Source of the DNA: Rebecca billardiae RCC1528
Lineage: Eukaryota > Protista > Haptophyta
Assembly (NCBI GenBank): GCA_965240325.2
Contig: OZ251233.1
Span: forward strand, 1,054,001-1,118,000
Direction: 5' to 3'
DNA: 64,000 nt
The notes beneath the pieces were generated by a model. The model saw only the letters and a program-made list of their open reading frames with translations, did not search any database and had not been told where the DNA came from. Each line of letters begins with the position of its first letter. Positions within the stretch are counted from its first letter, which is position 1. This document shows positions 38,326 to 55,420 of the stretch, piece by piece. A program made the position numbers and the translations under genes.

Positions 38326-39402
38326 TCATTGGAGGCCGTCACGGCGGCACCCTGGCCGCCTCGGCAGTGGCGCCGTCCGCGCCGCGGCCAGCGCTTGCGA
38401 GAGCGAGCTGCCGTGCCACCCATCGCCAGCAGCGGCAGACGCGGCAGCAGGGCCTGCGCTCGAGCAGGAGGAGCTGCTGCTGCTCAGCCGGGGAACGGCC
38501 GTGCTCGCGATGCTGCTCGCGGGCGATCCCGACTCGGCACAGAGGTCGACGGCGAACTCGTGCTTCACCCAGATCGCCGGTGGCTTCGGCGCCGCAGCCG
38601 CCGAGGCGACCCTGCTTCTCGACGGCGACGCCTCATCACCGCGCCGGCCGTTGCGCGGGTTCACGGCGGCGACGATGACGCTGATGCTCGTCCTGTGCGC
38701 GCGGCCGGAGCTGCTGCTGCGCGCGGGGGCGCTGCCGTCGGACGTTGACCCGCGCGCGCGCCCAAAGATGCCGCCGACGGCGTGGAGCGCGCTCGAGAGC
38801 GATGGGCGTGCCGAGCGTGGCGGAGCGTGCGGCGGCGCGCACGGTGCGGCGCTCGCCTCGGCGGCGACATCCACCGGGGTGGCGGGGGTCGGCGGAACGG
38901 GCGCATGCACGCGCTGCGGGATCGGCGAAACGGGCGAATGCACACGCGCCTCCCGCGCGAGCAGCGCGAGCGCGTCGTCGGGGCTCATCCTCCGCCACTT
39001 CGTGCGCTGCACGAGGTGCGCAAACGCCCGGTACTCGTCGTGCCCGACCAACACCGCCGAGCAGTCGAGCAGCGTGCACCACGCCTCGAGCTCCGCGCGG
39101 CACAGCTCGGCCGGGTGCAGGTTGGCCGCTTCGGCGACGAGCGGGAGCATGTTGTCGTAGCAGAGGTCGTTGGCGAACTTCTCGGCGAGGACGACGCACG
39201 CGGCGAAGTGAAGCGGCGCATCCGCCGCAAGGCGCTGCGCCGCATCGCCCGCGAGCAGCTGGCCAAAGTACGCGGTCGCGAGCACGATCGACTCGGCATC
39301 GATGCACGCGACCCAGCGCGTGTTGGGCGGCGGGCCGTGCTCGGGGGCGATCGCGGCGAGCAGCCTGCGCGCGCGCTTGAGCAGCACGTCGGGCGGCGTC
39401 AT
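38326..39402 (-). CDS. Cyclin-P-like copy 3
   Basis: Intact ORF, near-identical to copies 1, 2, 4 and 5. Confidence 0.7.
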   Translation of the reverse strand: MTPPDVLLKRARRLLAAIAPEHGPPPNTRWVACIDAESIVLATAYFGQLLAGDAAQRLAADAPLHFAACVVLAEKFANDLCYDNMLPLVAEAANLHPAELCRAELEAWCTLLDCSAVLVGHDEYRAFAHLVQRTKWRRMSPDDALALLAREARVHSPVSPIPQRVHAPVPPTPATPVDVAAEASAAPCAPPHAPPRSARPSLSSALHAVGGIFGRARGSTSDGSAPARSSSSGRAHRTSISVIVAAVNPRNGRRGDEASPSRSRVASAAAAPKPPAIWVKHEFAVDLCAESGSPASSIASTAVPRLSSSSSSCSSAGPAAASAAAGDGWHGSSLSQALAAARTAPLPRRPGCRRDGLQ

Positions 39403-40097
39403 GGAGTGGTTGGCGTTGTCGTGACCGACGTCGCTTGGCCCTCCAGCCGCTCGCAAACTTCGCGTGTTCACCAAGGCCCGGTGGATTCACGTGCGTCGGT
39501 CAACTTCGTCCCCGATGCGAATTTGCTAATTAAGTCCTACTACTAGTACACGCGTAAATCATATCTAGAATGAGTACCCGCTGTCAAGTAATTTCGAGGC
39601 CTGAGATGCCTTTGAATCCCTGTGATTCTTCATGACAATAATTCAGAGAGGTCGCCAGGTCGGTACGATCGGTAGTATTATTATACTGCGCTATGTTTTC
39701 ACGTGAGCGTACTCCTCTGAGCATTCATTGACGATCCAGCACGAACCGAGAATCACCGGCCGCGTGATTCTCGGTTCGTGCCGATTTAAACTGCGAGCGA
39801 ACACGCTCGTCGCCGCCCCATCGCCGTCCGCCCCATCGGCCACCATCGTCGTCACCGCGGTGTCTCGCGAGTCGCAACGCGTCGGTATCAGTCTGAGTCG
39901 CATTCTTCTGCATGATACAATTAGCCAGAGCGTCTTGCCGTGTCACACGGTTGTCAGCGACGGCCGCCGGTCGCGCGACGGCGCGAGGTGCCGCGCAGCC
40001 GATCACACAACAGTATGCATCGCGCGCCGAGCCGGCGAGCCCGCGTCGCGGCTCGGGCGCCGCCGCGTCGAAGCATGATCATGGGCTTCATCGTCCT

Positions 40098-41174
40098 TCA
40101 TTGGAGGCCGTCACGGCGGCACCCTGGCCGCCTCGGCAGTGGCGCCGTCCGCGCCGCGGCCAGCGCTTGCGAGAGCGAGCTGCCGTGCCACCCATCGCCA
40201 GCAGCGGCAGACGCGGCAGCAGGGCCTGCGCTCGAGCAGGAGGAGCTGCTGCTGCTCAGCCGGGGAACGGCCGTGCTCGCGATGCTGCTCGCGGGCGATC
40301 CCGACTCGGCACAGAGGTCGACGGCGAACTCGTGCTTCACCCAGATCGCCGGTGGCTTCGGCGCCGCAGCCGCCGAGGCGACCCTGCTTCTCGACGGCGA
40401 CGCCTCATCACCGCGCCGGCCGTTGCGCGGGTTCACGGCGGCGACGATGACGCTGATGCTCGTCCTGTGCGCGCGGCCGGAGCTGCTGCTGCGCGCGGGG
40501 GCGCTGCCGTCGGACGTTGACCCGCGCGCGCGCCCAAAGATGCCGCCGACGGCGTGGAGCGCGCTCGAGAGCGATGGGCGTGCCGAGCGTGGCGGAGCGT
40601 GCGGCGGCGCGCACGGTGCGGCGCTCGCCTCGGCGGCGACATCCACCGGGGTGGCGGGGGTCGGCGGAACGGGCGCATGCACGCGCTGCGGGATCGGCGA
40701 AACGGGCGAATGCACACGCGCCTCCCGCGCGAGCAGCGCGAGCGCGTCGTCGGGGCTCATCCTCCGCCACTTCGTGCGCTGCACGAGGTGCGCAAACGCC
40801 CGGTACTCGTCGTGCCCGACCAACACCGCCGAGCAGTCGAGCAGCGTGCACCACGCCTCGAGCTCCGCGCGGCACAGCTCGGCCGGGTGCAGGTTGGCCG
40901 CTTCGGCGACGAGCGGGAGCATGTTGTCGTAGCAGAGGTCGTTGGCGAACTTCTCGGCGAGGACGACGCACGCGGCGAAGTGAAGCGGCGCATCCGCCGC
41001 AAGGCGCTGCGCCGCATCGCCCGCGAGCAGCTGGCCAAAGTACGCGGTCGCGAGCACGATCGACTCGGCATCGATGCACGCGACCCAGCGCGTGTTGGGC
41101 GGCGGGCCGTGCTCGGGGGCGATCGCGGCGAGCAGCCTGCGCGCGCGCTTGAGCAGCACGTCGGGCGGCGTCAT
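40098..41174 (-). CDS. Cyclin-P-like copy 4
   Basis: Translation identical to copy 3, located 1772 bp away. Confidence 0.7.
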   Translation of the reverse strand: MTPPDVLLKRARRLLAAIAPEHGPPPNTRWVACIDAESIVLATAYFGQLLAGDAAQRLAADAPLHFAACVVLAEKFANDLCYDNMLPLVAEAANLHPAELCRAELEAWCTLLDCSAVLVGHDEYRAFAHLVQRTKWRRMSPDDALALLAREARVHSPVSPIPQRVHAPVPPTPATPVDVAAEASAAPCAPPHAPPRSARPSLSSALHAVGGIFGRARGSTSDGSAPARSSSSGRAHRTSISVIVAAVNPRNGRRGDEASPSRSRVASAAAAPKPPAIWVKHEFAVDLCAESGSPASSIASTAVPRLSSSSSSCSSAGPAAASAAAGDGWHGSSLSQALAAARTAPLPRRPGCRRDGLQ

Positions 41175-41845
41175 GGAGTGGTTGGCGTTGTCGTGACCGA
41201 CGTCGCTTGGCCCTCCAGCCGCTCGCAAACTTCGCGTGTTCACCAAGGCCCGGTGGATTCACGTGCGTCGGTCAACTTCGTCCCCGATGCGAATTTGCTA
41301 ATTAAGTCCTACTACTAGTACACGCGTAAATCATATCTAGAATGAGTACCCGCTGTCAAGTAATTTCGAGGCCTGAGATGCCTTTGAATCCCTGTGATTC
41401 TTCATGACAATAATTCAGAGAGGTCGCCGGTCGGTGCGCTATGTTTTCACGTGAGCGTACTCCTCTGAGCATTCATTGACGATCCAGCACGAACCGAGAA
41501 TCACCGGCCGCGTGATTCTCGGTTCGTGCCGATTTAAACTGCGAGCGAACACGCTCGTCGCCGCCCCATCGCCGTCCGCCCCATCGGCCACCATCGTCGT
41601 CACCGCGGTGTCTCGCGAGTCGCAACGCGTCGGTATCAGTCTGAGTCGCATTCTTCTGCATGATACAATTAGCCAGAGCGTCTTGCCGTGTCACACGGTT
41701 GTCAGCGACGGCCGCCGGTCGCGCGACGGCGCGAGGTGCCGCGCAGCCGATCACACAACAGTATGCATCGCGCGCCGAGCCGGCGAGCCCGCGTCGCGGC
41801 TCGGGCGCCGCCGCGTCGAAGCATGATCATGGGCTTCATCGTCCT

Positions 41846-42922
41846 TCATTGGAGGCCGTCACGGCGGCACCCTGGCCGCCTCGGCAGTGGCGCCGTCCGC
41901 GCCGCGGCCAGCGCTTGCGAGAGCGAGCTGCCGTGCCACCCATCGCCAGCAGCGGCAGACGCGGCAGCAGGGCCTGCGCTCGAGCAGGAGGAGCTGCTGC
42001 TGCTCAGCCGGGGAACGGCCGTGCTCGCGATGCTGCTCGCGGGCGATCCCGACTCGGCACAGAGGTCGACGGCGAACTCGTGCTTCACCCAGATCGCCGG
42101 TGGCTTCGGCGCCGCAGCCGCCGAGGCGACCCTGCTTCTCGACGGCGACGCCTCATCACCGCGCCGGCCGTTGCGCGGGTTCACGGCGGCGACGATGACG
42201 CTGATGCTCGTCCTGTGCGCGCGGCCGGAGCTGCTGCTGCGCGCGGGGGCGCTGCCGTCGGACGTTGACCCGCGCGCGCGCCCAAAGATGCCGCCGACGG
42301 CGTGGAGCGCGCTCGAGAGCGATGGGCGTGCCGAGCGTGGCGGAGCGTGCGGCGGCGCGCACGGTGCGGCGCTCGCCTCGGCGGCGACATCCACCGGGGT
42401 GGCGGGGGTCGGCGGAACGGGCGCATGCACGCGCTGCGGGATCGGCGAAACGGGCGAATGCACACGCGCCTCCCGCGCGAGCAGCGCGAGCGCGTCGTCG
42501 GGGCTCATCCTCCGCCACTTCGTGCGCTGCACGAGGTGCGCAAACGCCCGGTACTCGTCGTGCCCGACCAACACCGCCGAGCAGTCGAGCAGCGTGCACC
42601 ACGCCTCGAGCTCCGCGCGGCACAGCTCGGCCGGGTGCAGGTTGGCCGCCTCGGCGACGAGCGGGAGCATGTTGTCGTAGCAGAGATCGTTGGCGAACTT
42701 CTCGGCGAGGACGACGCACGCGGCGAAGTGAAGCGGCGCATCCGCCGCAAGGCGCTGCGCCGCATCGCCCGCGAGCAGCCGGCCAAAGTACGCGGTCGCG
42801 AGCACGATCGACTCGGCGTCGACGCACGCGACCCAGCGCGTGTCGGGCGGCGGGCCGTGCTCGGGGGCGATCGCGGCGAGCAGCCTGCGCGCGCGCTTGA
42901 GCAGCACGTCTGGCGGCGTCAT
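41846..42922 (-). CDS. Cyclin-P-like copy 5 (different upstream region)
   Basis: Intact ORF with a few N-terminal substitutions (PPDTRW, CVDAE, FGRLL). The 5' flank diverges beyond about 42955. Confidence 0.7.
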   Translation of the reverse strand: MTPPDVLLKRARRLLAAIAPEHGPPPDTRWVACVDAESIVLATAYFGRLLAGDAAQRLAADAPLHFAACVVLAEKFANDLCYDNMLPLVAEAANLHPAELCRAELEAWCTLLDCSAVLVGHDEYRAFAHLVQRTKWRRMSPDDALALLAREARVHSPVSPIPQRVHAPVPPTPATPVDVAAEASAAPCAPPHAPPRSARPSLSSALHAVGGIFGRARGSTSDGSAPARSSSSGRAHRTSISVIVAAVNPRNGRRGDEASPSRSRVASAAAAPKPPAIWVKHEFAVDLCAESGSPASSIASTAVPRLSSSSSSCSSAGPAAASAAAGDGWHGSSLSQALAAARTAPLPRRPGCRRDGLQ

Positions 42923-43512
42923 GGAGTGGTTGGCGTTGTCGCGACCGACGTCGGTTGGTGTTGGCAAACTTTACTCACTGTCATTGACGTCAACTTCATC
43001 TCCTCAATATCTGGACGAGCGATGTTGCGATTCTCGGTGAATCATGACCTCAGTTTTGAGCTACTACTACGTACAAGTATTCCCGAAGATGTTCAGCCTG
43101 TGAGATTGGTGAGATGACTCTTTTGTATCGGTGAGTCGGGAATTTGGAGAACCTCATGAATGGCCGAGGCGGCAAGTGGATGTGGCCAATATGTGGCCAA
43201 TGAATACTGCATACTCATCGCGATGACGATCCATATTCATCACTCCCGCCAAGCCGTTGGATCTCGCCATTCTCGGCCGGTGAGGTTTGCGCCGCCGTTA
43301 GCCTTGCCAGTGGCAGTCCTCGTGAGCGAACACACAATCATCATCATGCCGCCGCCGCCCCATCGGCCTTCATCCAAGTCACCGCGGTGTTTCCGTCTCG
43401 CGAGCGCGTCGGTATCCGTCTAAGTCGCATTCTTCTGAATGACACAGTCATAAGCCAGAGCGTCTTGCCGTGTCACACAGTGTCAATATGACGGCTGGTC
43501 GCGCGAGGTGGA

Positions 43513-44673
43513 TCACCACGGACTCACGGAGGCAGAGAGGCGGGCTCCAGGTAGGGTTCTTCGCGGAGGCGTCGTCGCGCGCACAGATGTCCTCGCCGTG
43601 GTGAGCGCGCGCGTGACAGCAGAGGGTGGTGGAATGCGAGCATGATGCCCGTCGACGCCGTGCCGGCCGTCAGCGCCAGCAGCGGAGGCGCACCCGGGGA
43701 GGCCTTCTTCTCCGCGGCTGAGGGCGGCGGCGCCGCTGCTGCTGCCGCTGCCGGGGCGGAAGGCTGAACTCGCGATGCCTGCGGATGACGACTGCGCGCG
43801 AAGGTCCTTGGCGCACGGGTGCGTCGCCCAGCGGGGTGACTGTGCTACGGCCGGCACGCCGTCCCTGCCGCTCCACCGCGCCGCTGCGCGGCGCTGGCCG
43901 TTGATGATGACGCTGATGTTCATAACACGCCGTCTCGTGCTGCACAGGTTGCTGCGGTCGGCATGCGACACGCGCGCGCGGCCGAAAATGCCGCGGACGG
44001 CGTGAAGCGCGCCCGAGAGTGGCCAAAGCAGCGAGCTCGGGGGTGCTTCGGCGGTTCGTGGCAGCGCGTGCGGTGCGGCACTCGCCCCCACAACGACATC
44101 CGCACGTGTGGTGCTGGGCGTTGGCGGCACGGCGGCAGGAGGATGAGCGACTGGCGCGTGCACGCGCGCCTCCCGCGCGAGCAGCGCGAGCGCGTCGTCG
44201 GGGCTAGTCTGTGCCCAAGCCGTGTGCTGGACGAGGTGCGCGAACGCCTGGTACTCGTCGGGTCCGACCAACACCGCCGAGCAGTCGAGCAGCGTGCACC
44301 ACGCCTCGAGCTCCGCGCGGCACAGCTCGGCCGGGTGCAGGTTGGCCGCCTCGGCGATGAGCGGGAGCATGTTGTCGTAGCAGAGGTCGTTGGCGAACTT
44401 CTCGGCGAGGACGACGCACGCGGCGAAGTGAAGCGGCGCATCCGCCGCAAGGCGCTGCGCCGCATCGCCCGCGAGCAGGCGGCCGAGGTACGCGGTCGCG
44501 AGCACGAGCGACTCGACGCCGACGCACGGGACCCAGCGCGTGTCGGGCGGCGGGCTGTGCTCGGGGGCGATCGCGGCGAGCAGCTTGCGCATGCGCGCGT
44601 GCATCGGTTGCCGCGGCGCCCCGCCGTGCGCGTCCGTGCGCCCGACGTCCGGGACGGCAGCGGCAGGTGACAT
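43513..44673 (-). CDS. Cyclin-P-like copy 6 (diverged paralogue)
   Basis: The cyclin box is nearly identical to the other copies, while the N-terminus and C-terminal tail have diverged. Confidence 0.7.
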   Translation of the reverse strand: MSPAAAVPDVGRTDAHGGAPRQPMHARMRKLLAAIAPEHSPPPDTRWVPCVGVESLVLATAYLGRLLAGDAAQRLAADAPLHFAACVVLAEKFANDLCYDNMLPLIAEAANLHPAELCRAELEAWCTLLDCSAVLVGPDEYQAFAHLVQHTAWAQTSPDDALALLAREARVHAPVAHPPAAVPPTPSTTRADVVVGASAAPHALPRTAEAPPSSLLWPLSGALHAVRGIFGRARVSHADRSNLCSTRRRVMNISVIINGQRRAAARWSGRDGVPAVAQSPRWATHPCAKDLRAQSSSAGIASSAFRPGSGSSSGAAALSRGEEGLPGCASAAGADGRHGVDGHHARIPPPSAVTRALTTARTSVRATTPPRRTLPGARLSASVSPW

Positions 44674-45008
44674 CGAATCCCGCCGGGCGGCGGGCGGCGG
44701 GCTGCGCGATGTGGAGAGGGGCTCGTCGTCGACTCAAGCGACGAGGTTTTTCATCTCGGTCGCAGGTCCCCGCCGCTGCGGACCGCAAAGGTGCCCGAGA
44801 GGGGCGAGGAATCTGTTGATTAATATAGCTCCCACTTTACTTCGTACGGCTTCAGGGCCGATGGGCGGTGACAGTTGGCGAGCGGGCGTCCTCGAATCAT
44901 TGTATACATATTCATCAAGATTCCCACATTACTCACCCCTTCAAGTGGTCCAACGGCCCCCCGCCCTGTCGCCCCCAATCCAACATGGCCGGCCACCCGT
45001 GCTTCGGT

Positions 45009-45092
45009 CTCGCGGCGACGTACCTCGGCCGCCTGTTCGCGGGCGATGCGGCGCAGCGCCTCGCGGCGGATGCACCGCTTCACTTCGCCTGT
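45009..45092 (+). pseudogene. Inverted relic fragment of the cyclin-like gene
   Basis: Encodes LAATYLGRLFAGDAAQRLAADAPLHFAC on the opposite strand, with no flanking homology. Confidence 0.75.
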
Positions 45093-46024
45093 AGCCGCAT
45101 AGGCTATGGCGGGCAAGAACAGCTTGAGTGATTCCGGAGAGTGTCCCGCGCGGTTGTCACCTGGCTGCCTGCCCCGGCGGCTGCAACTCGCGACGGCGGC
45201 GCGCCGAACCGTAGTATTGCTCGACTGGGTCTGCACACCGGGCGTCGCCTGCAACTGTTCACGACCGTCCGCCAGTCCTACAGTCCGAGGCTCAGTAGGC
45301 GCGCGCGCGCTTGATGGCGTGCCCTGCGCAGTCACGGTCACCAACTCACCTCAGGCTGCGCCTGCCCCGCCAGCGTCCGCAGGCGGGCGCAGCACCGGAC
45401 TGTCAACGCAGCTGCCTTACAGTAGTGCCTTGATGACAACCAGCTGTCTTGACAGCTGCAAGCACCCATCGTCTGACTTCTGAGCTAAATGCTGGCCAAA
45501 CCGCGCTGTTTATCAACGCTGAAGGTAGTCCTCAAGCTGCCGCCGGCGTGCAGCGGCGGCTGCAACTCACTTAGGCGCCCTGTCGTCAGGCTCAATGGCA
45601 TGTGTCGTGCCCGAGCGGCCGTGCGCAGCGACGACTGCATCGACGCGCGCCTCTCCGTGCGCCTCGCCGATGGGCCTTGTAGAACCGCGGTGGCGGTGCG
45701 GTGCCGCGGTGCCGCGCCGCGCGCGCGCGCCTGCGGCACGCCACCGGATGATATATATATAGTTGATATTCGTTACTGTAGTCAGTCGCTGAACGGCCAA
45801 CTCGTCCCATCGTCGTCGGGTCTGCCGGCCCTGGCAAGCTTCTCCGTCGCGTCCTAGACGCGCTGTGTTCGACCAGCCCCACCGTACAACCGGGACAAGG
45901 CCGCCAGGCCCCCGCAGTTTCATCAAAACGTCATCGCGCCGTTCCACGGCCGGCTGCCGTCCGTCATGGAGGACGGTCGCAGGCTATAGCGCTGGCGCGA
46001 GCAGCGCAGCCCGCTGCACGCCCG

Positions 46025-49000
46025 ATGGCGCCCACGCCGCAGCAGGTCGGCGCCGGCGCGGGCTTCGGCATAGATCGCGCGCGCGCGCCCGCCGCACCGA
46101 GCCGCGCCGCCCCGCTCGCGCCCTCCTCGCCCGGCGCGCGCGGCTCGGCCGGCTCGGCCGACGAGTCGAGCGGGTCGCCGCCCGGCTCGCACGCGCCCGC
46201 GAGCGTGCCGGCGCGCTGGGTGCGCTCACCGGCGTCGGCGCACGTCGCGTCGGCGCGGAGAACCCGGCGCAACACCGCGCCCGGCGAGGAGGCGCCGCGG
46301 CTCGGCGGCTCGGCGATGGCGTGGGCGCACCGCCGCCTCTCGTTCGGGCGCGAGCCCGGCTCGCCGCCGCGCGGCGCGGCGCCGCCGCGCGGCGCGGAGC
46401 TCGCGCGCGGCGGCGAGGAGGAGGCGAGCGAGCCGTCGACGCCGACCACGCCCATGCCCATGCGCGAGCTCGCGCGCAAGCTGCACGCGACGGGCGTCGA
46501 CCTGCGCTCGGTCGCGAAGCTCCGGCTCGGCATCCGCCGGCTGACGGCGGCGGACATGGCGGGCATCGAGGCGGTGCTCGCGTCGAACGGCGGCGTGCGC
46601 GTGCTCGACCTGCACGGGAACGAGCTCGTGGACGACGGCGTCATCGCGCTGTGCGCCGCGCTGCGCGGCTCGCGCTCCGCCGTCGCCACGCTCCGGCTGG
46701 GCGCGAACGGCGTCGGCGACCGCGGCTGCACGGCGCTTGGTCGCCTGCTGCACCGCAACACGACGCTGCGGACGCTCGAGGCGGGCGCGAACGGGATCGG
46801 CGAGCGCGGCGCGATGGAGCTCGGCGCCGCGCTCGAGTCGAGCTGCGCGCTCACCTCGCTCGACCTCTCGGCGAACCGCGTGCGCGACGCCGGCGCCGCC
46901 GCGCTCGCGCGCGCGCTGCTGCTCAACAGCTCACTGCGCCGGCTGCGGCTCGGCGCCAACGGCGTGACGGACGTGGGCGCACTCGAGCTCGGCGCCGCGC
47001 TGGGCGGCGGCGGGAACAGCAGCCTCGAGACGCTCGACCTGCGCGCGAACCTGATCGAGGACGCCGGCTGCGCCGCGCTCGCCGACGCGCTGCGCGACCC
47101 GGGCTGCGCGCTCACCAAGCTCGAGCTCTCGGCCAATTGCATCGGCGACGCCGGCTGCGAGGCGATGGCGGCAGCGCTCGGCGAGTCGCGCCGGCTGCGG
47201 CGGCTCGGGCTCGGCGCGAACGGCAGCGCGACGCGGGGCGGCGAGTTCTGGCTGCGCCTCGCGCTCTTCCGCGCGGCCGACGCGCTCGAGGCGCTCTCGC
47301 TCCCGCTCGCCGGACCCGTCGACGCCGCCGTGCTCGAGCTGTACCGCACGGCCGCGCCGACGCCGCCGACGCCGACGCCGCCGCCTCTTGAGACGACGCC
47401 GACGCCCGCCTCGCAGCCGCCGCCGCACGCCGCCGCAAACGCCGCCGCGGACGGCGCCGACGGCGCCGCCGCCGAGCCGCGCGCGGTCGTGGACAAGGCG
47501 CTCCTCGGCCGCGAGGCGCAGCTCTGGGCCGAGGGCGTCGGCGCGCTCGGCGACGAGCGGCAGCAAGAGGCCGCGGCGCGGCTGCTGGCTTACTCGGCCG
47601 CGCGCGCGCCGCGGCACTGCGTGCGCTTCGCCGTCGAGGTGGCCATCGCCTCGCGCGCGCTCGCGCGGCGCACGCGGATGGCGGACGCGGACGCGTCAGA
47701 GTCGCACGACGTCGCTTCGAGACTCGTGCAGCTCGCGCTCGGCGGCGTGCTCGCCGCGACCCGCCCCGAGCTCGACCCGAGCGTGCGCGACACGTGGCGC
47801 GCGTTCGAGCGCGCAGTCGAGGTACGCGGCGCGCGCGTCTGCGCGCGCGCGCGCCCTGAGCCGCGCCAGCGGCCTGGAGCGCGTGAGGCTCGTCGTGACC
47901 GGCCGCGCGCGCCGCCGTGCCCCGCCCCCGTGTGTATTGTTTAAATATTATTTGTGTTTTCGGTACGCGCGCGCAGGGCTCGTGCACTGTGGCGCTTGCG
48001 CTGCCTGCGGTGCAACAGGCGCATGAGCGGCTACTGACGGGCTCGCTCGGCGAGGCCGCGCGCTGGGCGGGCCGGTGCGCGCGCTCCGAGCGGCCGCGCG
48101 CGGCCGACGCGTGCGTCCTCCTCATCCTCTGCGTCGCCCAGCTCGTCACGCAGCCGCTCGCGTTCGTGGCTCTCGCAGTGTGGCCGGACGCGCGGCCGCG
48201 GCTCGAGCGCGCCCTTGGCCGGCGCGCGTACCTCGAGAGGATCGGCGCCCTCGCGCGCTGGCTCACGGGCGAGGAGCCGAGCGGTCTGCCGGAGGGCCAC
48301 GCGCTGTGGGTCGCCGACCCGATCGTGCGCATCGGCGCGGACGTGCTCGCGTCGATCGGGCTGGTGCTCGTGTGCGTGCGGTTGCCGCAGCCGCCCGCGG
48401 CGCACGGCTCAGTGTGGGGAGCGCTTGACGCGGCCGCGCGCGCGCTCTGGCGCGCCGACGCGCTCGGCGGCGGCACTGCCGAGGGGGCCGAGGGCGCGCC
48501 CTCGCCCGCTGCGGACGTCCTTCTGACGCTGCTCGCTCTCGGCACCGCCGTGGGCTCCCTCTGCGTCGAGCTCGAGGAGCTGGTTAGAGACGGGCTGTTT
48601 CGCCAGCCGGCGCGCGCCGTGCGAGGTTACTTGGTGGACGAGTTCAACTGGTTTGATTCCGTCGGGATCGGGCTCGCCGTGAGCGCGCTGCTGGTGCGGC
48701 TGGCCGCGCTGGGCGCGCGCGAGGACGCGGGCGGAAGCGCCGACGACTGGTCGGCGTGGGCGGCGGCGGCGGCGGAGGAGGAGGAGGAGGGCGGGGAGCC
48801 CCGCCTGGCGTCGGTGTCGCGCGCACTCCTCTCCGCCGCCGTGTTGCTACTGACCCTCCGCCCGATGCGCGCCCTCTACCTCACAAACGCCCTCGGCCCG
48901 CTGCTGCTGATGGTGTTCCGGATGGTGCAAGACGTGCTGCGGCTCTGCGCGCTCGCGCTGCCCATGGTCGCCGCGTTCGGCTGCGCGCTGCACGTGCTCT

Positions 49001-51024
49001 TCAAGGGGCTGCCCGGCTCGCGCGGCGCGGCGGGCGCGCCGGCATACGCGTGCGCGGACGTGGATGAGCGCGCGCTCGCCGAGGGTGACTACCGCGCCTC
49101 CGTGCCCGGCGCGATGACCGGCCTCGCCGAGATGTTCGTCGGCGCGAAGGAGGCGCCGTGGGTGTGCATGCGCACGAGTCAGGCCGGCGCGCTCGCGTGG
49201 TGGCTGCAGGCGGGGTACGCGCTGCTGATGACGGTGCTGCTCCTCAACGTCCTCATCGCGGCGATGGCCAAGAGTGCGCCGCGACCGCCGACCCGCCGCA
49301 ACCGCCGACCCGCCGCGACCGCCTTGCCCGCCGCGACCGCCGCACCCACCAGGGGAGAGAGGGAGTTAGGGTTAGGGGTTAGGGTTGGGCGAGGCACCGC
49401 GGCCCCTGGGCTAGCGCAGCGGCGCCTATCCGGTCCAGGGGAGAGCGGAACGCGCAGCACCCGCGGCCGTGCGCCCGCCCCGCGCCAGGCCGGCCACGCC
49501 GCCCAAGCGCGATCCGACGCCGACGGCGCGCGCCCGCCCCGTGGCCCACGCCCCGCCCTGCGCCGCGCGCGCTCGGCGTCGCCAGCGTTCGAGCTCATCC
49601 ACGAGTCCCTCGACATGAACGCGATCTACGTGCGCGCCAAGCTCATCCAGGCGAGCACAAGGCTCCCGGTCGCGCCGCCGCCGCTCAATCTCATCTCGCT
49701 GCCGTGCCGCGCCGCGCTCGCGCTCGCGCGCGGCACGCCCGCCGCGCCGCGCCGGCTGGCGGCCGCGGCCGTCGGCGCGTGGCGAGCCGCGCGGCGGCCC
49801 GCGCGGCGCTCAGCGCCGTCGGCGGGCGCGCACGTCACGCCGGATTCGTCCGTCGAGCCCTCGCAGCTGCCCTCGCTCCAGCCCTCCTCGCGCGCGACGC
49901 CTCGAGCTGCGCGCGGCGGCGCGCCGGGCGACGCGGCCGGCGCGGCCGCGGCGGGCGACGCGGCGGCCGCGCCCGCCGCGCCCGCCGAGCGGACTCCGGT
50001 CGTGGCGATCGACGCGGCGTCCATGTCCACGCGCGTGCCGCCGGGCACGCGGCTCACCGCGCTCGCGTTGCCGATCGGCGGCGGCGCGCGCGCGCTCTCT
50101 GACACGCCGCCGCCCGGCTGGGAGGCGCGCGAGGCCGGCGCGCCGCGCGCCGAGCATCCGGGATGGGCGGCGGCGGCGCCGCGCGGCCCGACCCGTGATG
50201 ATGAGCGCGCGTGGTCGGATGAGGAGCCCTCAGAGCCGCCGAGCTCGGCGCCTGGCCTCGAGCTGTCCGAGCCGCCCGGCTCGCGCGCGAGCCCCGCCGC
50301 CGCGCGCCGCGCCGCCACCGCCGCGCTCAAGCCCGCCGACGCGGCCGCGAGCGCAATCGGCGCGTGGCGGCGCGCGGCGCGCGAGCGCGAGGCCCTGGCG
50401 CGCGCGGTGCTCGGCTTTGTGGCGGCACACCTGGCCGACGCGGACGTGGGCGAGCGCTGGCGCAAGACGACGTCGAGGCGCGTGCTCGAGCTGCGCGGCA
50501 CGCTCGAGGCGCTGCGGCATGAGGTCGCCGGCCTCGCGCGCGCAACGCAGCTCGCAGCGCGCGCCGAGCCGCGCCGGCCGGGCGCTCCGGCGGCGGGCGG
50601 CGCCGAGCTCGAGCGCGCGGATGAGGGCGAGTCGGACGCGGCGCGGCGCGCGCGCGCGCTCGCGCCGCTCGGTGGCGGTGCCGCCGACGCGCCGAGCGCG
50701 CGCCGAGCGCGGCGCTCCAGCCGCAGCGCGCAGCTGGGCGCGCGCGCGCTCGGCGCGCGCGCGCTGCGCCTCTCCGCGGGCGCGGCGGTGCCGGCCGACG
50801 CCGAGCTGGACGACGAGCTCGGCGCCGCGCGGCCGCTGGGAGAGCGCCGGCTCCGACGGCAGTCGACGGGCGGCGCGAGCAGCGCCGCGAGCCACTCGAG
50901 CGACGACGAGCGCGGCGGTGGGCGTGGCGCCGCCGCCGGATCGCCGCTGGTGTCGTCCGCGGCCGCCTTCCCGCGCGCGCAGACCTTCGCCTCGGGCGAC
51001 TTCCGCGCGCTGCGCCGCTGGTAG
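46025..51024 (+). CDS. Ribonuclease-inhibitor-type LRR domain fused to a TRP-like cation channel; introns 47822-47976 and 49274-49585
   Basis: About eight 28-aa LxxLxLxxNxIGDxGxxxL repeats. A phase-0 GT..AG intron joins AVE|GSCTVALALPAVQQ (pre-S1-like). The channel region has YLVDEFNWFD (S2-S3) and LRPMRALYLTNALGPLLLMVFRMVQDV (S4-S5). The second splice gives LLNVLIAAMAKTFELIHES...YVRAKLI (S6/TRP helix). Confidence 0.8.
49366..49389 (+). repeat. Interstitial telomere-like (TTAGGG)n remnant inside an intron
   Basis: ttaggg ttagggg ttaggg ttggg. Confidence 0.6.
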
Positions 51025-51738: not shown

Positions 51739-53877
51739 TCAGCACTCGGCGAACAGGAGGTGCGCCTTGTCGAAGTGAGCGTGACGACTGCCGCGCCGTC
51801 GGGTGGCGAGGCCGGCGCCACGATCGTCGTCCGCGCCGCCGCCGCCGAGAAAGTCGCCGACGTCAGCGAGGGTGGTAGCGCGCGGCTCGCGCAGGCGGCG
51901 CAGCTGCGCCTCGTCGAAGACGCGGCAGCGCCGCGCCTCGGCGGACGGCACCAGCTGCGCCGCGCGAGCGTCCCACACGTCGCGGCTCACGAGCACCGCC
52001 GCGTGCGAGAGCACAATCTCGTGCGCACCCCGCGAGATCGCGATCTCGCGCGCGCCCGGCTCGAGCGCGGGTGCGCGCGCGCTGCCGGCGCGTGGGTCGA
52101 TGGCGTCGGGGCCGGCGCGCGCGCCGCGCGCCGCCGCGTCGAGCCCGCCCTCGGCGTTGCCGCGCAGCACGTTCGCGCGCACCTCGACGTACCCGTCGTG
52201 CTGCACGAGCAGCCCGGGCCCGCCGTTCGCCTCGAGCGCGCTCGCCTGCAGCGTGAGCGCGCCGTGCTCGATCACTGCGACGCCCGCGTGCGCATTGCCG
52301 CGCACTGCCGAGCGTGCCAGCACCTTGGTGGGCGCGGTGACGAGCGCGCGCTGCGCGCCGGGCGCGCTGTGCGCGAGCTCGAGCGGCATCCCGCCGCCCG
52401 GCGGCCTCGCGCGCAAGTTCGCGTCGCGCACCACCAGCCCCATCTGCCCGTTGGCCGTGAGCTCCGAGCGCGTGACGATCGCGCAGCACGGTCCGACCAG
52501 CTTTGCGCCCGCGCGCGCGTTCGCGAAGAGGACGCAACGGTCGAGCGAGGCGTACGCGTGCTCGTGCACGCTGAGGCCGCAGTGCGCCGCGCGCGCGAGC
52601 GCGCAGTGCGTGAGCGCCACCTCGGCGTGCTGCTTCACCGTCACCGCCGACGCGTGCTCCGCGCCGCGGAAGCAGCACGCGCGCGCCGACACGCAGCCGT
52701 GCCCGACCGCGCAGAGCGGCGCGCGGCGCAGGTCGACGTCGTCGAGCTCGAGGCGTGCGCCGTTGCCGACGCCGCCCTTCACGACGACGGCGAACGGCGC
52801 CGCCGCGTACGCCGCGCCCACCGGCACGCCGCCCGCCCACGCCGCCGCGCCCGCCGCCGGCGCGTACTCGAGCGCAAGGTTGACGAACCGCGCTCGGCAG
52901 TTGCGCCGCACGATGATTGGGTGCGCGAGGAGAAGCACGGGCGGCGCGGGCGCCGGGAGGCCGAGGATGCGCAGCGTGAGCGCGGGGTCCTCGAGCAGCA
53001 GCGGCGCGTCGGCGCTCGCCTGGTGCACGCAGCCCCCCGCCAGCTCCACCGTCACCTGCGAGCGCCGGCCCGCGTCTGCCGCGCGCGCGCCGTCGGCCGC
53101 GGCCGCCTCACGGCTCGCGCGCACGTGCGCCAGCGCGTGCGCAAGCGTCGCGAAGCGGCGCGGGCCGAGCGCCTCGCCCGGCGCGACGACGCGCAGCGTG
53201 ACGCTCGGCTCGTCCTCCGACCAAAGCTCGTGTAGCCGTCGCCCGCTCGCGGCGAAGTGCGCCGCGCGGAGCATCGCCGCGGGCGTCGGCCTGAAGTCGT
53301 GCCAACGGTCGCAGTGCGCGTCGGCCGAGGCCTTGCGGAGGACCTGCGCGCGCCACGGCGCCGAGCTCGCAAAGGGCTCCGGCAGCGGGGAGGCACACGG
53401 AGGCTCCACGCCGACTGCCTCGGCCCACCAGCCCATCGGCCGCCACGGCCGCCGCTCGAAGTAGGCGCGCCACAGCCCGTCGTCGCGCAGCAGCCGCTGC
53501 AGCGAACGGCTGACGGCGCGCAGCGCGACGAAGGCCCCGGGCTCGTCCACGGCAAGCGCGATGCGCGCGATGAGCTCCTCCGGGAGGCCCAAGAGCGTGA
53601 CCTCCGAGCTCGCCAGCACCGTCGCCGGCCCAGCGACCGGTGAGCGCATGAGGCGGGGCGAGGGCCAAAATGCAACGCGCGGGGGTGAGCGCAACACCGA
53701 CCGACCGCCCTTGTTGCGCAAGCGGTTGGGTTGGGTCGGGCGGGCGCCGTCTTGGACGGCTGCGTTCGAGGCGCTCTCGTCGCCGAAACCGGCGGCCGCC
53801 GGACTGCGCAGAATTCCTGGCGGCGGCGGCGGCGGGTGCTCCGCCATCAAACCTTCGGCTGCTTCGCAAAAGTTCAT
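51739..53877 (-). CDS. F-box protein with right-handed parallel beta-helix (FBXO10/11-like architecture)
   Basis: F-box LLGLPEELIARIA...LRAVSRSLQRLLRDDGLWRAYF, followed by PbH1-like repeats (ANARAGAKL, ANGQMGLVV, GNAHAGVAV, ANGGPGLLV, GNAEGGL). The start is uncertain (ATGs at 53955, 53877, 53847). Confidence 0.82.
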   Translation of the reverse strand: MNFCEAAEGLMAEHPPPPPPGILRSPAAAGFGDESASNAAVQDGARPTQPNRLRNKGGRSVLRSPPRVAFWPSPRLMRSPVAGPATVLASSEVTLLGLPEELIARIALAVDEPGAFVALRAVSRSLQRLLRDDGLWRAYFERRPWRPMGWWAEAVGVEPPCASPLPEPFASSAPWRAQVLRKASADAHCDRWHDFRPTPAAMLRAAHFAASGRRLHELWSEDEPSVTLRVVAPGEALGPRRFATLAHALAHVRASREAAAADGARAADAGRRSQVTVELAGGCVHQASADAPLLLEDPALTLRILGLPAPAPPVLLLAHPIIVRRNCRARFVNLALEYAPAAGAAAWAGGVPVGAAYAAAPFAVVVKGGVGNGARLELDDVDLRRAPLCAVGHGCVSARACCFRGAEHASAVTVKQHAEVALTHCALARAAHCGLSVHEHAYASLDRCVLFANARAGAKLVGPCCAIVTRSELTANGQMGLVVRDANLRARPPGGGMPLELAHSAPGAQRALVTAPTKVLARSAVRGNAHAGVAVIEHGALTLQASALEANGGPGLLVQHDGYVEVRANVLRGNAEGGLDAAARGARAGPDAIDPRAGSARAPALEPGAREIAISRGAHEIVLSHAAVLVSRDVWDARAAQLVPSAEARRCRVFDEAQLRRLREPRATTLADVGDFLGGGGADDDRGAGLATRRRGSRHAHFDKAHLLFAEC

Positions 53878-55420
53878 GCTCGGAAGTCCCACAGCGGGAC
53901 TTCTCCGGGCCTGCGGTACTCGCCAGTGAAAACCTCCCGCGCCCCTCGAGATCATACGGAGTTGGCGGCGAGATCGCGCTCTTGCGGCGGGCGGCGGGCG
54001 GGAGCGCGCGCCGTCGCTCGCTCGCGCGCTCGCTGCCCGCAGCGCGCGCGTCAGGTCGTCGCGAGCGCTTGCGCACCGGCACTAGGGCGCGTGCCACCTG
54101 CGCACGCCGCTGCTTCGCGCCTGCGCGCTCTGCTCCGCCGCTGCGGCGCTTGCGAGCGCTCGCCGTGTCCTGCGCTGGTTCCGGGCCGCGTCGAAAGCCT
54201 GGTTGTGCGGCCAGCCAAGTGTGGCGTTTGCGGCTTGGCGCGCGAGCGCGCGACGCAGCGGATGGCGCGTGCGAGCCGCCCGGCCAGCTACACTCGCCTC
54301 GTGCGCCGCGTGCCGACCGCGAGACCCAGATTCGACGCCGAGCGCTGCTCGGTCACGGTGAGACGGGTCGGCGCTCCGCATCGCAGAGCCGCGCGTGGTC
54401 GCGCAGAAGAGGCCGCGCGTGGCCGGCGCGGCCGCTGTGTGCCGTGGTCTAGACTTCAATCGCGTCCTCAGTTGCTTGCCTTGCCCAAGCGGTCACGCCG
54501 CACTCACGAGTGGGCGACTTGACCTGACTCTGCGTGCCGGGCCGTATCTCGTGCCGCCAGCAGTGGGCTCGAACAAATCCATCCTACTCCATTGGTAGAC
54601 GGCTTCAAGAACTCGATGGTTATGGTCTGGTAGCGCGCTGATGACACGTGCACGATCTCCGTGAGCGCAGCTCTTCCACGCAAGGGCTTATGTGGCTACG
54701 ATCGGTGACGGCGTGACCTCGAGACACCTTCCGGAATCCACCTCACGTGTCACGCGCTGTGTACGGGCAGAAGATGAGTGACCGCTTGGGCGAGGCAAGC
54801 GTTCTCACCTACTGCGGACGCGATTGAAGTCTAGACCACGGCACACAGCGGCCGCGCCGGCCACGCGCGGCCTCTTCTGCGCGACCACGCGCGGCTCTGC
54901 GATGCGGAGCGCCGACCCGTCTCACCGTGACCGAGCAGCGCTCGGCGTCGAATCTGGGTCTCGCGGTCGGCACGCGGCGCACGAGGCGAGTGACGCTGGC
55001 TGGACGGCTCGCACGCGCCATCCGCTGCGTCGCGCGCTCGCGCGCCAAGCCGCAAACGCCACACTTGGCTGGCCGCACAACCAGGCTTTCGACGCGGCCC
55101 GGAACCAGCGCAGGACACGGCGAGCGCTCGCAAGCGCCGCAGCGGCGGAGCAGAGCGCGCAGGCGCGAAGCAGCGGCGTGCGCAGGTGGCACGCGCCCTA
55201 GCGCCGGTGCGCAAGCGCTCGCGACGACCTGACGCGCGCGCTGCGGGCAGCGAGCGCGCGAGCGAGCGACGGCGCGCGCTCCCGCCCGCCGCCCGCCGCA
55301 AGAGCGCGATCTCGCCGCCAACTCCGTACAGATCTCGAGGGGCGCGGCCCGCGCGGGAGGTTTTCACTGGCGAGTACCGCAGGCCCGGAGAAGTCCCGCT
55401 GTGGGACTTCCGAGCATGAA
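53873..55420. repeat. Long inverted repeat (arms about 53873-54496 and 54778-55420; spacer about 280 bp) covering the F-box gene 5' region
   Basis: The arms are highly similar reverse complements, and identical shadow ORFs appear on both strands (e.g. MKSRPRHTAAAP at 54082- and 54824+). Confidence 0.92.

What the first reader, a model, noticed from the sequence alone, without database searches (positions are those of the whole stretch)
46025..51024. LRR-TRP channel chimera: an NLR/RI-type LRR sensor fused to a TRP-like pore
Seen: two canonical introns join an RI-like LRR solenoid, a TRPC/TRPM-like helical linker, a 6-TM channel with LLNVLIAAM S6 and a C-terminal coiled coil into one protein. 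Established: characterised TRP channels carry ankyrin or MHR N-termini, whereas LRR-channel fusions are known for LRRC8, which has a different pore. Inference: a candidate ligand- or pathogen-gated cation channel, receptor and executor in one chain, in a microalga.
Basis: partly seen in the sequence, partly recalled or inferred. Interest (0 to 1): 0.7.

Follow-up and report, generated by a model that had tools for sequence, protein, structure and literature searches.

The report
TRP-like channel with LRR N-terminus
This is one real three-exon algal gene for a TRP-type cation channel whose usual ankyrin or melastatin cytosolic head is replaced by a ribonuclease-inhibitor-type leucine-rich-repeat horseshoe. 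The architecture recurs in related algae, and no paper in the library searched describes it.

Summary
Window 46025-51024 (+) holds one gene of three exons: 46025-47821, 47977-49273 and 49586-51024, about 1510 codons.

- **Exon 1:** nine RI/NLR-type LRR units, then the first half of a TRPM/TRPC-like linker helical domain.
- **Exon 2:** the rest of that linker and a six-helix TRP transmembrane domain. The family profile matches TRPC4 at 1.9e-38 and a TRPM2 chanzyme at 2.7e-37.
- **Exon 3:** a TRP helix, a PPPLNL motif and a conserved C-terminal helix.

No RNA run was listed. Both splice junctions are instead fixed at residue resolution by collinear homologues. These are one uninterrupted ORF on a 13-kb contig, a Pavlova sp. 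transcript-derived protein, and three further single-ORF proteins with LRR_6 plus Ion_trans. LRR-bearing relatives fall in one supported group; ankyrin-bearing TRPs lie outside it.

The S2/S3 Ca2+-site residues of TRPM/TRPC (E, E, N, D) are kept. The TRP-box tryptophan is not.

The LRR has no signal peptide or preceding membrane segment, so it is cytosolic. Pathogen or ligand gating is untested. First-stage notes of this scan (unchecked) list at least six other LRR-TRP loci on other DNA of the same genome.

I rate it a new variant of a known kind.

The parts
46025..47821 (+). Exon 1 (599 codons): start ATG, low-complexity N-terminus, LRR domain, Pro/Ala-rich spacer and the first half of the linker helical domain.
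   Evidence: ORF. Third-position GC rises from 0.52 to 0.94 at 46025. The donor GT follows at 47822.
46460..47275 (+). RI/NLR-type LRR horseshoe, nine beta-alpha units (about residues 146-417). It is cytosolic.
   Evidence: Pfam LRR_6 3.2e-20. Ribonuclease inhibitor 7.8e-29. AlphaFold2 gives nine strand-helix units with pLDDT above 90. Foldseek: NLRP9 7.9e-14 and RI 8e-13.
47276..47491 (+). Pro/Ala-rich spacer predicted to be disordered (about residues 418-489).
   Evidence: pLDDT below 50 in the model. GCC-type triplet repeat at 47351-47474. The region is variable among homologues.
47495..47821 (+). First half of the TRPM-MHR4 / TRPC-LHD-like linker helical domain (five helices, residues 491-598). 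It lies in the same exon as the LRR.
   Evidence: Helices with pLDDT 73-94. BLASTP to P0070 310-403 (3e-10) and to P0002 90-342 (7e-13). The family profile aligns this block to nvTRPM2 from residue 617 onward.
47822..47976 (+). Intron 1 (155 nt, GT..AG) with an AT-rich patch near its 3' end. It contains the stop that ends ORF 46025-47944.
   Evidence: Sequence. Third-position GC 0.67. The homologues are continuous across the junction.
47977..49273 (+). Exon 2 (432 codons plus the first base of a split codon): second half of the linker, pre-S1 and S1-S6.
   Evidence: BLASTP of residues 1-432 to P0070 437-820 gives 1e-50. Ion_trans 1.1e-8. AlphaFold2 pLDDT 86.9. Foldseek finds TRPC3-6.
48319..49269 (+). 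Transmembrane domain S1-S6 (exon 2 residues 115-431), including the pore helix and filter at about 49102-49149 and S6 at 49189-49269.
   Evidence: Helix pattern from DSSP on the model. Alignment to TRPC4 and nvTRPM2. Conservation of G307, F, Y414, N424, L426, I427 and A428.
48568..48657 (+). Codons of the putative S2/S3 cation (Ca2+) site. Exon 2 residues E198, E201, N224 and D227 correspond to protein residues 797, 800, 823 and 826.
   Evidence: They align to nvTRPM2 E893, Q896, N918 and D921. The role of those residues is described in PMC5976436. Conservation in the family is 36/40, 32/40 (E or Q), 41/43 and 39/43.
49274..49585 (+). Intron 2 (312 nt, GT..AG, in frame and without a stop). It holds a 17-nt tandem repeat and a TTAGGG-like run.
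   Evidence: Sequence. No homologue has the 104 extra residues between S6 and the TRP helix. Third-position GC is about 0.70 in its centre. Repeats.
49586..51024 (+). Exon 3 (the last two bases of the split Thr codon, 478 codons and the stop at 51022-51024).
   Evidence: ORF. Third-position GC is at least 0.85 up to the stop and then falls.
49588..49707 (+). TRP helix and the conserved PPPLNL motif that follows it. Ala stands at the position of the TRP-box tryptophan.
   Evidence: BLASTP to P0070 822-869 gives 7e-14 at 58% identity. The profile aligns the region to nvTRPM2 1064-1136. Position counting is and PMC9242649.
50371..50565 (+). Conserved C-terminal helix (family motif FV..H..DA..ERWR) followed by about four heptads. 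It is a possible equivalent of the rib and pole helices.
   Evidence: BLASTP to P0070 903-953 gives 3e-5. Alignment A4. The match to TRPC4 700-796 is weak, E 0.87. The heptad score is reached by 7% of shuffles.

Best explanation
Window 46025-51024 (+) is one intact three-exon gene for a protein of about 1510 residues. The protein belongs to a protist (pavlovophyte-type) lineage of group-I, TRPC/TRPM-like TRP channels.

**Shown here**
- The N-terminal cytosolic domain, which in animal TRPs is an ankyrin-repeat or melastatin-homology domain, is a nine-unit ribonuclease-inhibitor-type LRR horseshoe.
- A disordered spacer joins the LRR to a linker helical domain like TRPM MHR4 or the TRPC LHD. That linker is split by intron 1.
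- A pre-S1 region, S1-S6, a TRP helix and a conserved C-terminal helix follow.
- The four S2/S3 side chains that bind Ca2+ in TRPM2/4/5/8 and a cation in TRPC4/5 are present and conserved.

**Inferred**
- The protein assembles as a tetramer and conducts cations.
- Its gating is activated or tuned by cytosolic Ca2+ at the S2/S3 site.
- The LRR ring hangs below the pore in the cytosol and acts as a binding platform for a partner or ligand. Occupancy or movement is passed to the gate through the linker domain and the TRP helix, as ankyrin and MHR domains do in other TRPs.
- What the LRR binds is unknown.
For: **Gene model**
- Canonical GT..AG introns and the third-position GC pattern.
- Exon-by-exon collinearity with P0002, an uninterrupted ORF at L004:6001-8757: exon 1 residues 331-598 align to 90-342, exon 2 residues 1-432 to 344-703, and exon 3 residues 1-29 to 705-733.
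- The same collinearity holds with P0070, a protein derived from the Pavlova sp. CCMP459 MMETSP transcriptome.

**Fusion is a family trait**
- P0010, P0012 and P0019 carry LRR_6 (about 1e-16 to 1e-19) and Ion_trans in single ORFs on contigs L002, L001 and L003.
- Diacronema lutheri KAG8457333.1 (P0066) has LRR_6 at 3.5e-6 plus Ion_trans.
- All LRR-bearing proteins fall in one group with SH-aLRT support 99, and the ankyrin-bearing TRPs lie outside it.

**TRP identity**
- Profile matches to TRPC4, TRPM2 and CrTRP1 range from 1e-38 to 1e-33.
- The linker block encoded by the exon 1 tail aligns to nvTRPM2 from residue 617 onward.
- The AlphaFold2 and Foldseek results agree.

**Ca2+ site:**

**Cytosolic LRR:** there is no hydrophobic segment before the LRR (translation) and the fold is RI/NLR-type.
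Against: - No RNA run of this organism was listed, so splicing rests on homology and composition.
- No function was measured.
- Only about 7 of the 12 group-I TRP fingerprint residues are kept. The TRP-box Trp and the pre-S1 Trp are lost, so coupling between the gate and the TRP helix may differ.
- The fifth, indirect Ca2+-site residue (nvTRPM2 E1110) is Ala here.
- The LRR is degenerate in several relatives (P0070, P0002, P0006). That argues against a strictly conserved ligand.
- I did not search or fold the joined protein, so nothing is known about how the domains pack together.
Confidence: 0.65

Rival explanations
1. Sensor and executor in one chain. The cytosolic LRR recognises a pathogen- or virus-derived molecule or another specific ligand, and binding opens the TRP pore directly. 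The result is a Ca2+ or cation influx that triggers defence or death. In logic this resembles NLR resistosome channels, but without an NTPase.
For: - The LRR is of the RI/NLR subtype. The best structural matches include the LRRs of NLRP9, NLRP3 and NOD2.
- The LRR part is far more variable between relatives than the channel part.
- Scan notes report several paralogues in this genome (unchecked). That pattern is compatible with diversifying receptors.
Against: - There is no NACHT or NB-ARC domain or other switch domain.
- RI-type LRRs are equally typical of housekeeping and axonemal proteins.
- No selection analysis on the LRR surface was possible, and no ligand is known.
- The degenerate LRRs in some relatives look like decay rather than diversification.
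Confidence: 0.15
2. Tether or gating-spring model. The LRR anchors the channel to a cytoskeletal, flagellar or haptonemal structure. The channel would then be a mechanosensor, or a channel localised to flagella, as the NOMPC ankyrin spring tethers that channel to microtubules.
For: - Many of the best LRR matches are axonemal proteins: DRC5, RSP15, LRRC34 and doublet-microtubule LRR proteins.
- The named relatives come from flagellated pavlovophytes.
- Algal TRPs in flagella are reported in the literature (PMC11085791).
Against: - Those matches reflect the generic RI-type repeat, not specific orthology.
- A 70-residue disordered spacer lies between the LRR and the linker. That makes a poor force-transmitting element.
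- There are no localisation data.
Confidence: 0.12
3. Two separate adjacent genes, an LRR protein and a TRP channel, read as one by mistake. A variant of this rival is a decaying pseudogene.
For: - ORF 46025-47944 ends at a stop inside the proposed intron, and an AT-rich patch lies there.
- No RNA evidence was available.
Against: - The last 110 residues of the LRR exon encode the first half of the TRP linker domain. That half is contiguous with the second half in single-ORF and transcript-derived homologues, with no residue missing at the junction.
- Only 155 nt separate the two coding blocks.
- All three exons are open and have third-position GC above 0.92.
Confidence: 0.04

Closest known systems
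TRPC4/TRPC5 (and TRPC3/6), animal canonical TRP channels
   Same: - They give the best profile match (1.9e-38) and the best structural matches.
- The match covers the linker helical domain, pre-S1, S1-S6 and the LLNMLIA-type S6.
- The E/E-N-D cation site in S2/S3 is shared, and so is a proline-rich PPP-type motif after the TRP helix.
- The C-terminal helix resembles the TRPC4 rib/pole region only weakly (E 0.87).
   Different: - The N-terminus is an LRR, not four ankyrin repeats.
- There is no EWKFAR TRP box; Ala stands at the Trp position.
- Only about 7 of the 12 fingerprint residues are kept.
- Identity in the structural alignments is about 15%.
TRPM2 (Nematostella nvTRPM2, choanoflagellate TRPM2 chanzyme) and TRPM4/5
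   Same: - Profile matches are 2.7e-37 and 7e-32.
- With the longer profile, the match extends into the MHR4-like block encoded by the exon 1 tail.
- The Ca2+-site residues E893, Q896, N918 and D921 correspond to E, E, N and D here.
   Different: - There are no MHR1-3 domains and no NUDT9-H domain.
- The fifth Ca2+-site residue, E1110, is Ala here.
- The TRP-box Trp is absent.
Chlamydomonas reinhardtii TRP1 (CrTRP1, PDB 6pw4)
   Same: - It is an algal group-I-like TRP, matched at 2.2e-33.
- It too keeps only 7 of the 12 fingerprint residues and lacks the TRP-box Trp (PMC9242649).
   Different: - In the searches run here, exon 1's LRR matched no part of the CrTRP1 chain; its N-terminal domain was not examined further.
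- It comes from a different lineage (green alga).
Diacronema lutheri KAG8457333.1 (P0066) and Pavlova sp. CCMP459 MMETSP protein (P0070)
   Same: - They have the same order of parts: LRR or LRR remnant, linker, TRP transmembrane domain, TRP helix with PPPLNL, and the ERWR helix.
- Identity to the window protein in the channel region is 32% (P0070) and 39% (P0066).
   Different: - They are paralogue-level or more distant relatives, with weaker or degenerate LRRs.
- They are annotated only as 'hypothetical protein' or 'Ion transport domain-containing protein'.
LRRC8/VRAC (the known fusion of LRR and channel)
   Same: A cytosolic LRR horseshoe is covalently attached to a pore-forming membrane domain. 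The regulatory logic may be analogous.
   Different: From established knowledge of LRRC8, not tested here:
- The LRRC8 pore is a pannexin-like 4-TM domain that forms hexamers.
- Its LRR is C-terminal and of a different repeat class.
- It conducts anions and osmolytes.

No sequence relation was seen here: no hit appeared.
NOMPC/TRPN
   Same: It is a TRP channel whose very large N-terminal solenoid repeat domain is the sensing element.
   Different: Its solenoid consists of 29 ankyrin repeats, not LRRs, and is joined directly to the linker. Here a disordered spacer intervenes.

Membership tests
TRP channel superfamily, group I (TRPC/TRPM/TRPV/TRPA/TRPN-like) | Six-helix Ion_trans membrane domain with an S1-S4 bundle, a pore helix and S6 | tested here: met
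   - Pfam Ion_trans 1.1e-8.
- AlphaFold2 pLDDT 86.9 with the expected helices.
- Foldseek finds TRPC3-6, TRPV6 and nvTRPM2.
TRP channel superfamily, group I (TRPC/TRPM/TRPV/TRPA/TRPN-like) | Significant sequence-profile similarity to solved TRP channels rather than to Kv, Nav or Cav channels | tested here: met
   - The 60 best of 209 profile matches to solved structures are all TRP channels: TRPC4 1.9e-38, TRPM2 chanzyme 2.7e-37, CrTRP1 2.2e-33.
TRP channel superfamily, group I (TRPC/TRPM/TRPV/TRPA/TRPN-like) | Pre-S1 and linker helical region before S1, and a TRP-domain helix after S6 | tested here: met
   - The profile aligns the linker to nvTRPM2 residues 617-720 and the helix after S6 to 1064-1136.
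- The match to TRPC4 starts at residue 285.
TRP channel superfamily, group I (TRPC/TRPM/TRPV/TRPA/TRPN-like) | TRP-box tryptophan (rTRPV1 W697, mTRPC5 W639), 21 residues after the S6 Asn | tested here: not met
   - Counting 21 residues from N424 gives Ala. The relatives have Ala, Ser or Thr there.
- CrTRP1 (Phe) and TRPY (Tyr) also lack the Trp (PMC9242649).
TRP channel superfamily, group I (TRPC/TRPM/TRPV/TRPA/TRPN-like) | [quoted passage not shown] | tested here: inconclusive
   - About 7 of 12 residues are kept: G307, the S5 Phe, Y414, N424, L426, I427 and A428.
- The pre-S1 Trp is Leu, the Phe is Ile, the S1 Tyr is Ser, the pore-helix aromatic is uncertain, and the TRP-helix Trp is Ala.
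- CrTRP1 also has 7, and TRPY has 8.
TRP channel superfamily, group I (TRPC/TRPM/TRPV/TRPA/TRPN-like) | Tetrameric assembly and cation conduction | not testable with these tools
   This needs expression with electrophysiology, or a solved structure.
TRPC subfamily | N-terminal ankyrin repeats and the EWKFAR TRP box | tested here: not met
   - Exon 1 has no Ank hit; only LRR families were found.
- The TRP helix reads ..NAIYVRAKL...
TRPM subfamily | N-terminal melastatin homology regions 1-3 | tested here: not met
   - Exon 1 matches only LRR families and LRR structures.
- Only the MHR4-like end of the linker is shared.
TRPM / TRPC Ca2+ (cation) site in the S1-S4 domain | Glu and Gln/Glu in S2, and Asn and Asp in S3 (nvTRPM2 E893, Q896, N918, D921) | tested here: met
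   - E198, E201, N224 and D227 of exon 2 occupy these columns.
- The roles of the residues are given in PMC5976436.
- Binding itself was not tested.
Ribonuclease-inhibitor-type (LRR_6, RI/NLR class) leucine-rich repeats | Tandem beta-strand/alpha-helix units of 28-29 residues forming a horseshoe | tested here: met
   - LRR_6 3.2e-20 and RI 7.8e-29.
- Nine strand-helix units spaced 28-30 residues apart, pLDDT above 90.
- Foldseek finds NLRP9 and RI at 1e-13 to 1e-12.
NLR (NACHT or NB-ARC plus LRR) immune receptors | Central STAND NTPase domain | tested here: not met
   No NACHT or NB-ARC hit was found in any exon at E up to 1.
LRRC8/VRAC | Pannexin-like four-helix pore domain with a C-terminal LRR | tested here: not met
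   The pore here is TRP-type and the LRR is N-terminal. No pannexin or LRRC8 hit appeared.

The most novel reading that the evidence does not exclude
The LRR-TRP proteins may be a lineage-specific, multi-copy family of cytosolic receptor-channels. In each paralogue the LRR would recognise a different intracellular ligand, for example a viral or bacterial product or a metabolite. Binding would open the attached TRP pore directly. That would be a one-polypeptide sensing and Ca2+-signalling device without a nucleotide-binding switch.
Probability: 0.15. Interest if true: 0.85.

Novelty: new variant of a known kind. Interest (0 to 1): 0.58.

Why it matters
Group-I TRP channels solved so far couple their pore to ankyrin or melastatin-homology cytosolic domains. 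This gene shows that a whole clade of algal TRPs has exchanged that head for an RI/NLR-type LRR. The clade kept the linker, the S2/S3 Ca2+ site and the S6 gate.

That gives a natural experiment on how different cytosolic solenoids drive one gating machine. It also adds a class of candidate Ca2+-entry channels in haptophyte-type algae, whose sensory channels are almost uncharacterised.

If the LRR turns out to bind specific ligands, the family would be a compact receptor-channel. That would interest work on protist immunity and on engineered sensors.

For annotation, these genes are easily split at intron 1 or labelled only as 'Ion transport domain-containing protein'.

Tried and rejected
- **RNA evidence:** The look-up of sequencing runs (kind rna) on 46025-51024 listed no run, so read laying could not be used.
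- **Word-index protein search:** the second ORF (region 21-452) found nothing, and P0012 found only itself. Low-complexity words probably swamped the candidate list. The exhaustive HMMER search was what found the family.
- **Metagenome scan:** the scan with exon 2 returned only two distant ankyrin-bearing TRP contigs, L005 and L006. It returned no spliced transcript of this gene.
- **ESM Atlas:** the look-up of P0012 gave no usable hit.
- **C-terminal profile:** the profile of the C-terminal region (A4) against solved structures gave nothing significant. The best E-values were 0.2-0.5, to coiled-coil proteins and TRPC6. The heptad test was weak.
- **Exon 3 families:** Pfam found no family in exon 3.
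- **YVC1_C:** precomputed YVC1_C hits are on record for relatives but were not reproduced for the window's exons.
- **Literature:** four searches for LRR-bearing TRP channels found no paper describing them. That library lacks most subscription journals, so this is not proof of absence.
- **Opposite strand and neighbours:** I rejected the opposite-strand ORFs 45964-47496 and 47112-48545 as Ala/Arg/Pro-rich artefacts of 80% GC. I found no functional link to the neighbouring genes.

Full report
**What is in the sequence.** The region is extremely GC-rich eukaryotic DNA, with 0.73-0.84 GC in the coding blocks. Two long + strand ORFs, 46025-47944 and 47917-51024, overlap by a few bases in different frames. 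A GT at 47822-47823 directly follows a codon boundary. An AG at 47975-47976 directly precedes the frame of the second ORF. Together they define a 155-nt intron. A second GT (49274) to AG (49585) pair defines a 312-nt intron. It lies in frame and carries no stop, which is why the second ORF reads through it.

Third-position GC supports this model. It is 0.92-0.97 in the three exons, 0.67 in intron 1, and falls to about 0.70 in the centre of intron 2. It rises from 0.52 to 0.94 at the ATG at 46025 and falls after the stop at 51022-51024. The model is therefore exon 1 at 46025-47821, exon 2 at 47977-49273 and exon 3 at 49586-51024, about 1510 codons in all. I never built, searched or folded the joined protein.

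**Domain content, exon by exon.**
- **Exon 1, LRR.** It matches Pfam LRR_6 at 3.2e-20 and porcine and human ribonuclease inhibitor at 8e-29 to 9e-27, followed by NLRP and NOD2 LRRs and axonemal LRR proteins. An AlphaFold2 model of residues 130-599 shows nine strand-helix units with pLDDT above 90. Foldseek returns NLRP9, NLRP3 and ribonuclease inhibitor at 1e-13 to 1e-12.
- **Exon 1, after the LRR.** The model then shows a disordered Pro/Ala-rich spacer (residues 415-489) and five helices (491-598, pLDDT 73-94).
- **Exon 1, topology.** No hydrophobic segment or signal peptide precedes the LRR. The LRR is therefore cytosolic, like all TRP N-termini.
- **Exon 2.** It matches Ion_trans at 1.1e-8. 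As a single sequence it matches nvTRPM2 (3.5e-4) and Chlamydomonas TRP1 (1e-2). Its model, built with a 46-row alignment, has pLDDT 86.9 and pTM 0.79. Its best structural matches are TRPC3, TRPC4, TRPC5 and TRPC6, then TRPV6 and nvTRPM2.
- **Exon 3.** It has no Pfam hit.

**Is it one gene?** No RNA run was listed for this stretch, so I used comparative evidence. An exhaustive HMMER search of 1.84 billion representatives with exon 2 found 64 relatives. The best had E = 2e-41, and no hit exceeded 53% identity over its matched stretch.

- **P0002.** This 918-residue relative is encoded by one uninterrupted ORF, L004:6001-8757, on a 13-kb contig beside PsbP- and Brix-domain genes. Exon 1 residues 331-598 align to P0002 90-342. 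Exon 2 residues 1-432 align to 344-703. Exon 3 residues 1-29 align to 705-733.
- **Junction 1.** The window reads ..FERAVE | GSCTVALALPAVQQAH.. and P0002 reads ..LERAVAGECKHLIALPAVQAAH.., with no gap.
- **Junction 2.** The window reads ..AAMAK, then a split Thr codon, then FELIHESLD... The Pavlova protein P0070 reads ..AAMAKTFDLIYESLD...
- **P0070.** It comes from the MMETSP transcriptome of Pavlova sp. CCMP459 and is collinear with all three exons: 310-403, 437-820 and 822-869.
- **The tail of exon 1.** The last 110 residues of the LRR exon are not a free C-terminus. In the family alignment they form a conserved block (F.VE.A..C...A...R ... QLA..G.L) that runs straight into the block encoded by exon 2. 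A profile of that alignment matches nvTRPM2 from residue 617, inside the MHR4/linker region, through S5, and then S6 and the TRP helix (7e-32).

The reading as two separate genes is therefore very unlikely.

**The fusion is a family trait.** Three relatives carry strong LRR_6 hits together with Ion_trans: P0010 (1.8e-16), P0012 (2.9e-19) and P0019 (4.2e-19). Each is a single ORF on its own contig. Diacronema lutheri KAG8457333.1 (P0066) passes the LRR_6 cut-off when its N-terminus is scanned alone (3.5e-6). P0070, P0006 and P0022 keep only sub-threshold LRR traces. The more distant hits carry ankyrin repeats (P0021, P0031, P0043, P0047, P0053, P0059, P0061).

On a quick maximum-likelihood tree of the channel region, all proteins with an LRR or an LRR trace fall in one group of 21 rows with SH-aLRT support 99. 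No ankyrin-bearing protein is in that group. This is a short tree search with several long branches, so a single origin of the LRR head is likely but not proven.

The contigs differ in GC (0.53-0.69), so several organisms are involved. Named members are pavlovophyte haptophytes. First-stage notes of this scan list at least six further LRR-TRP loci on other pieces of the same genome. I could not check them.

**What kind of TRP.**
- **Closest solved channels.** A 46-sequence profile of the linker plus transmembrane region matches TRPC4 (1.9e-38), TRPC5, a TRPM2 chanzyme (2.7e-37), CrTRP1 (2.2e-33), and TRPC3/6 and TRPM4/5. It is thus about equally close to TRPC and TRPM and belongs to neither.
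- **Fingerprint.** Against the twelve-residue group-I fingerprint of Cabezas-Bratesco et al. (PMC9242649), the window protein keeps about seven residues. These are the S4-S5 Gly, the S5 Phe, the S6 Tyr and N-x-L-I-A of the gate. It loses the pre-S1 Trp, two S1 aromatics and the TRP-box Trp, which is Ala here. CrTRP1 also scores seven.
- **Ca2+ site.** The four side chains that bind Ca2+ in nvTRPM2 are E893, Q896, N918 and D921 (PMC5976436). A related site is present in TRPC4/5 (PMC7431192). These correspond to E198, E201, N224 and D227 of exon 2. In the family they are conserved in 36/40, 32/40 (E or Q), 41/43 and 39/43 sequences.
- **Other motifs.** A pore-helix Glu, the filter Gly and a pore-loop Cys are also conserved. 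After the TRP helix comes a PPPLNL motif shared with nvTRPM2 (APPLVLL).
- **C-terminus.** Further on, a conserved helix (FV..H..DA..ERWR) is shared by the family. It resembles the TRPC4 700-796 rib/pole region only weakly (E 0.87). The heptad signal behind it is weak, and 7% of shuffles reach it. The coiled coil remains plausible, not shown.

**How it most likely works.**
- **Shown:** the architecture, the TRP fold, the cytosolic RI-type LRR and the conserved S2/S3 acidic site.
- **Inferred:** a tetrameric cation channel whose opening depends on, or is tuned by, cytosolic Ca2+. The N-terminal LRR, hanging below the membrane on a flexible spacer, binds a partner or ligand and biases the gate through the linker domain and the TRP helix.
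- **Rivals:** I give these about 0.15, 0.12 and 0.04.
- **For and against the receptor idea:** it gains a little from the greater variability of the LRR relative to the channel, and from the reported paralogue number. It loses from the lack of any NTPase switch and from the LRR decay seen in some relatives.

**Novelty.** The architecture already sits in public databases as unnamed or generically named proteins. I found no paper describing TRP channels with LRR N-termini. Reviews and surveys of algal and diatom TRPs do not mention them. I rate it a new variant of a known kind, real, and of moderate to good interest.

**Limits.**
- There are no RNA reads for this organism.
- The joined protein was neither searched nor folded.
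- The tree is a quick search.
- The organism of several relatives is unknown.
- The literature library lacks most subscription journals.

Noticed in passing
window 49366-49377 (within about 49355-49390, inside intron 2): A short telomere-like run lies inside intron 2: TTAGGGTTAGGG flanked by near-copies. It is the only such match in the window; 0.01 are expected by chance. A 17-nt tandem repeat (4.1 copies) lies just upstream at 49277-49347.
   Followed up: partly
window about 35200-43200: About five tandem copies of a 1.75-1.77-kb unit. The same ORF set and the same 33-nt and 24-nt internal repeats recur at spacings of 1748-1772 nt. The ORFs have no Pfam family.
   Followed up: partly
window 44422-44507 and 45004-45089: An 86-nt piece of the upstream minus-strand gene (43513-44673) is repeated in inverted orientation, 91% complementary. 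The copy lies in the intergenic region between that gene and the LRR-TRP gene.
   Followed up: partly
window 51739-53955 (-): The downstream convergent gene encodes a 738-residue protein with sub-threshold F-box-like (1.3e-4) and right-handed beta-helix (1.4e-5) hits. No link to the channel is evident.
   Followed up: partly
window 47925-47965: An AT-rich patch of about 40 nt lies near the 3' end of intron 1, in otherwise roughly 80% GC DNA. It may be a branch-point or polypyrimidine region. It contains the TAA that ends the first ORF.
   Followed up: no
L004:3158-5883: The contig carrying the single-ORF relative P0002 also encodes a HAD-hydrolase/PsbP-domain protein and a Brix-domain protein, all as uninterrupted ORFs. 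That suggests an intron-poor photosynthetic eukaryote.
   Followed up: no
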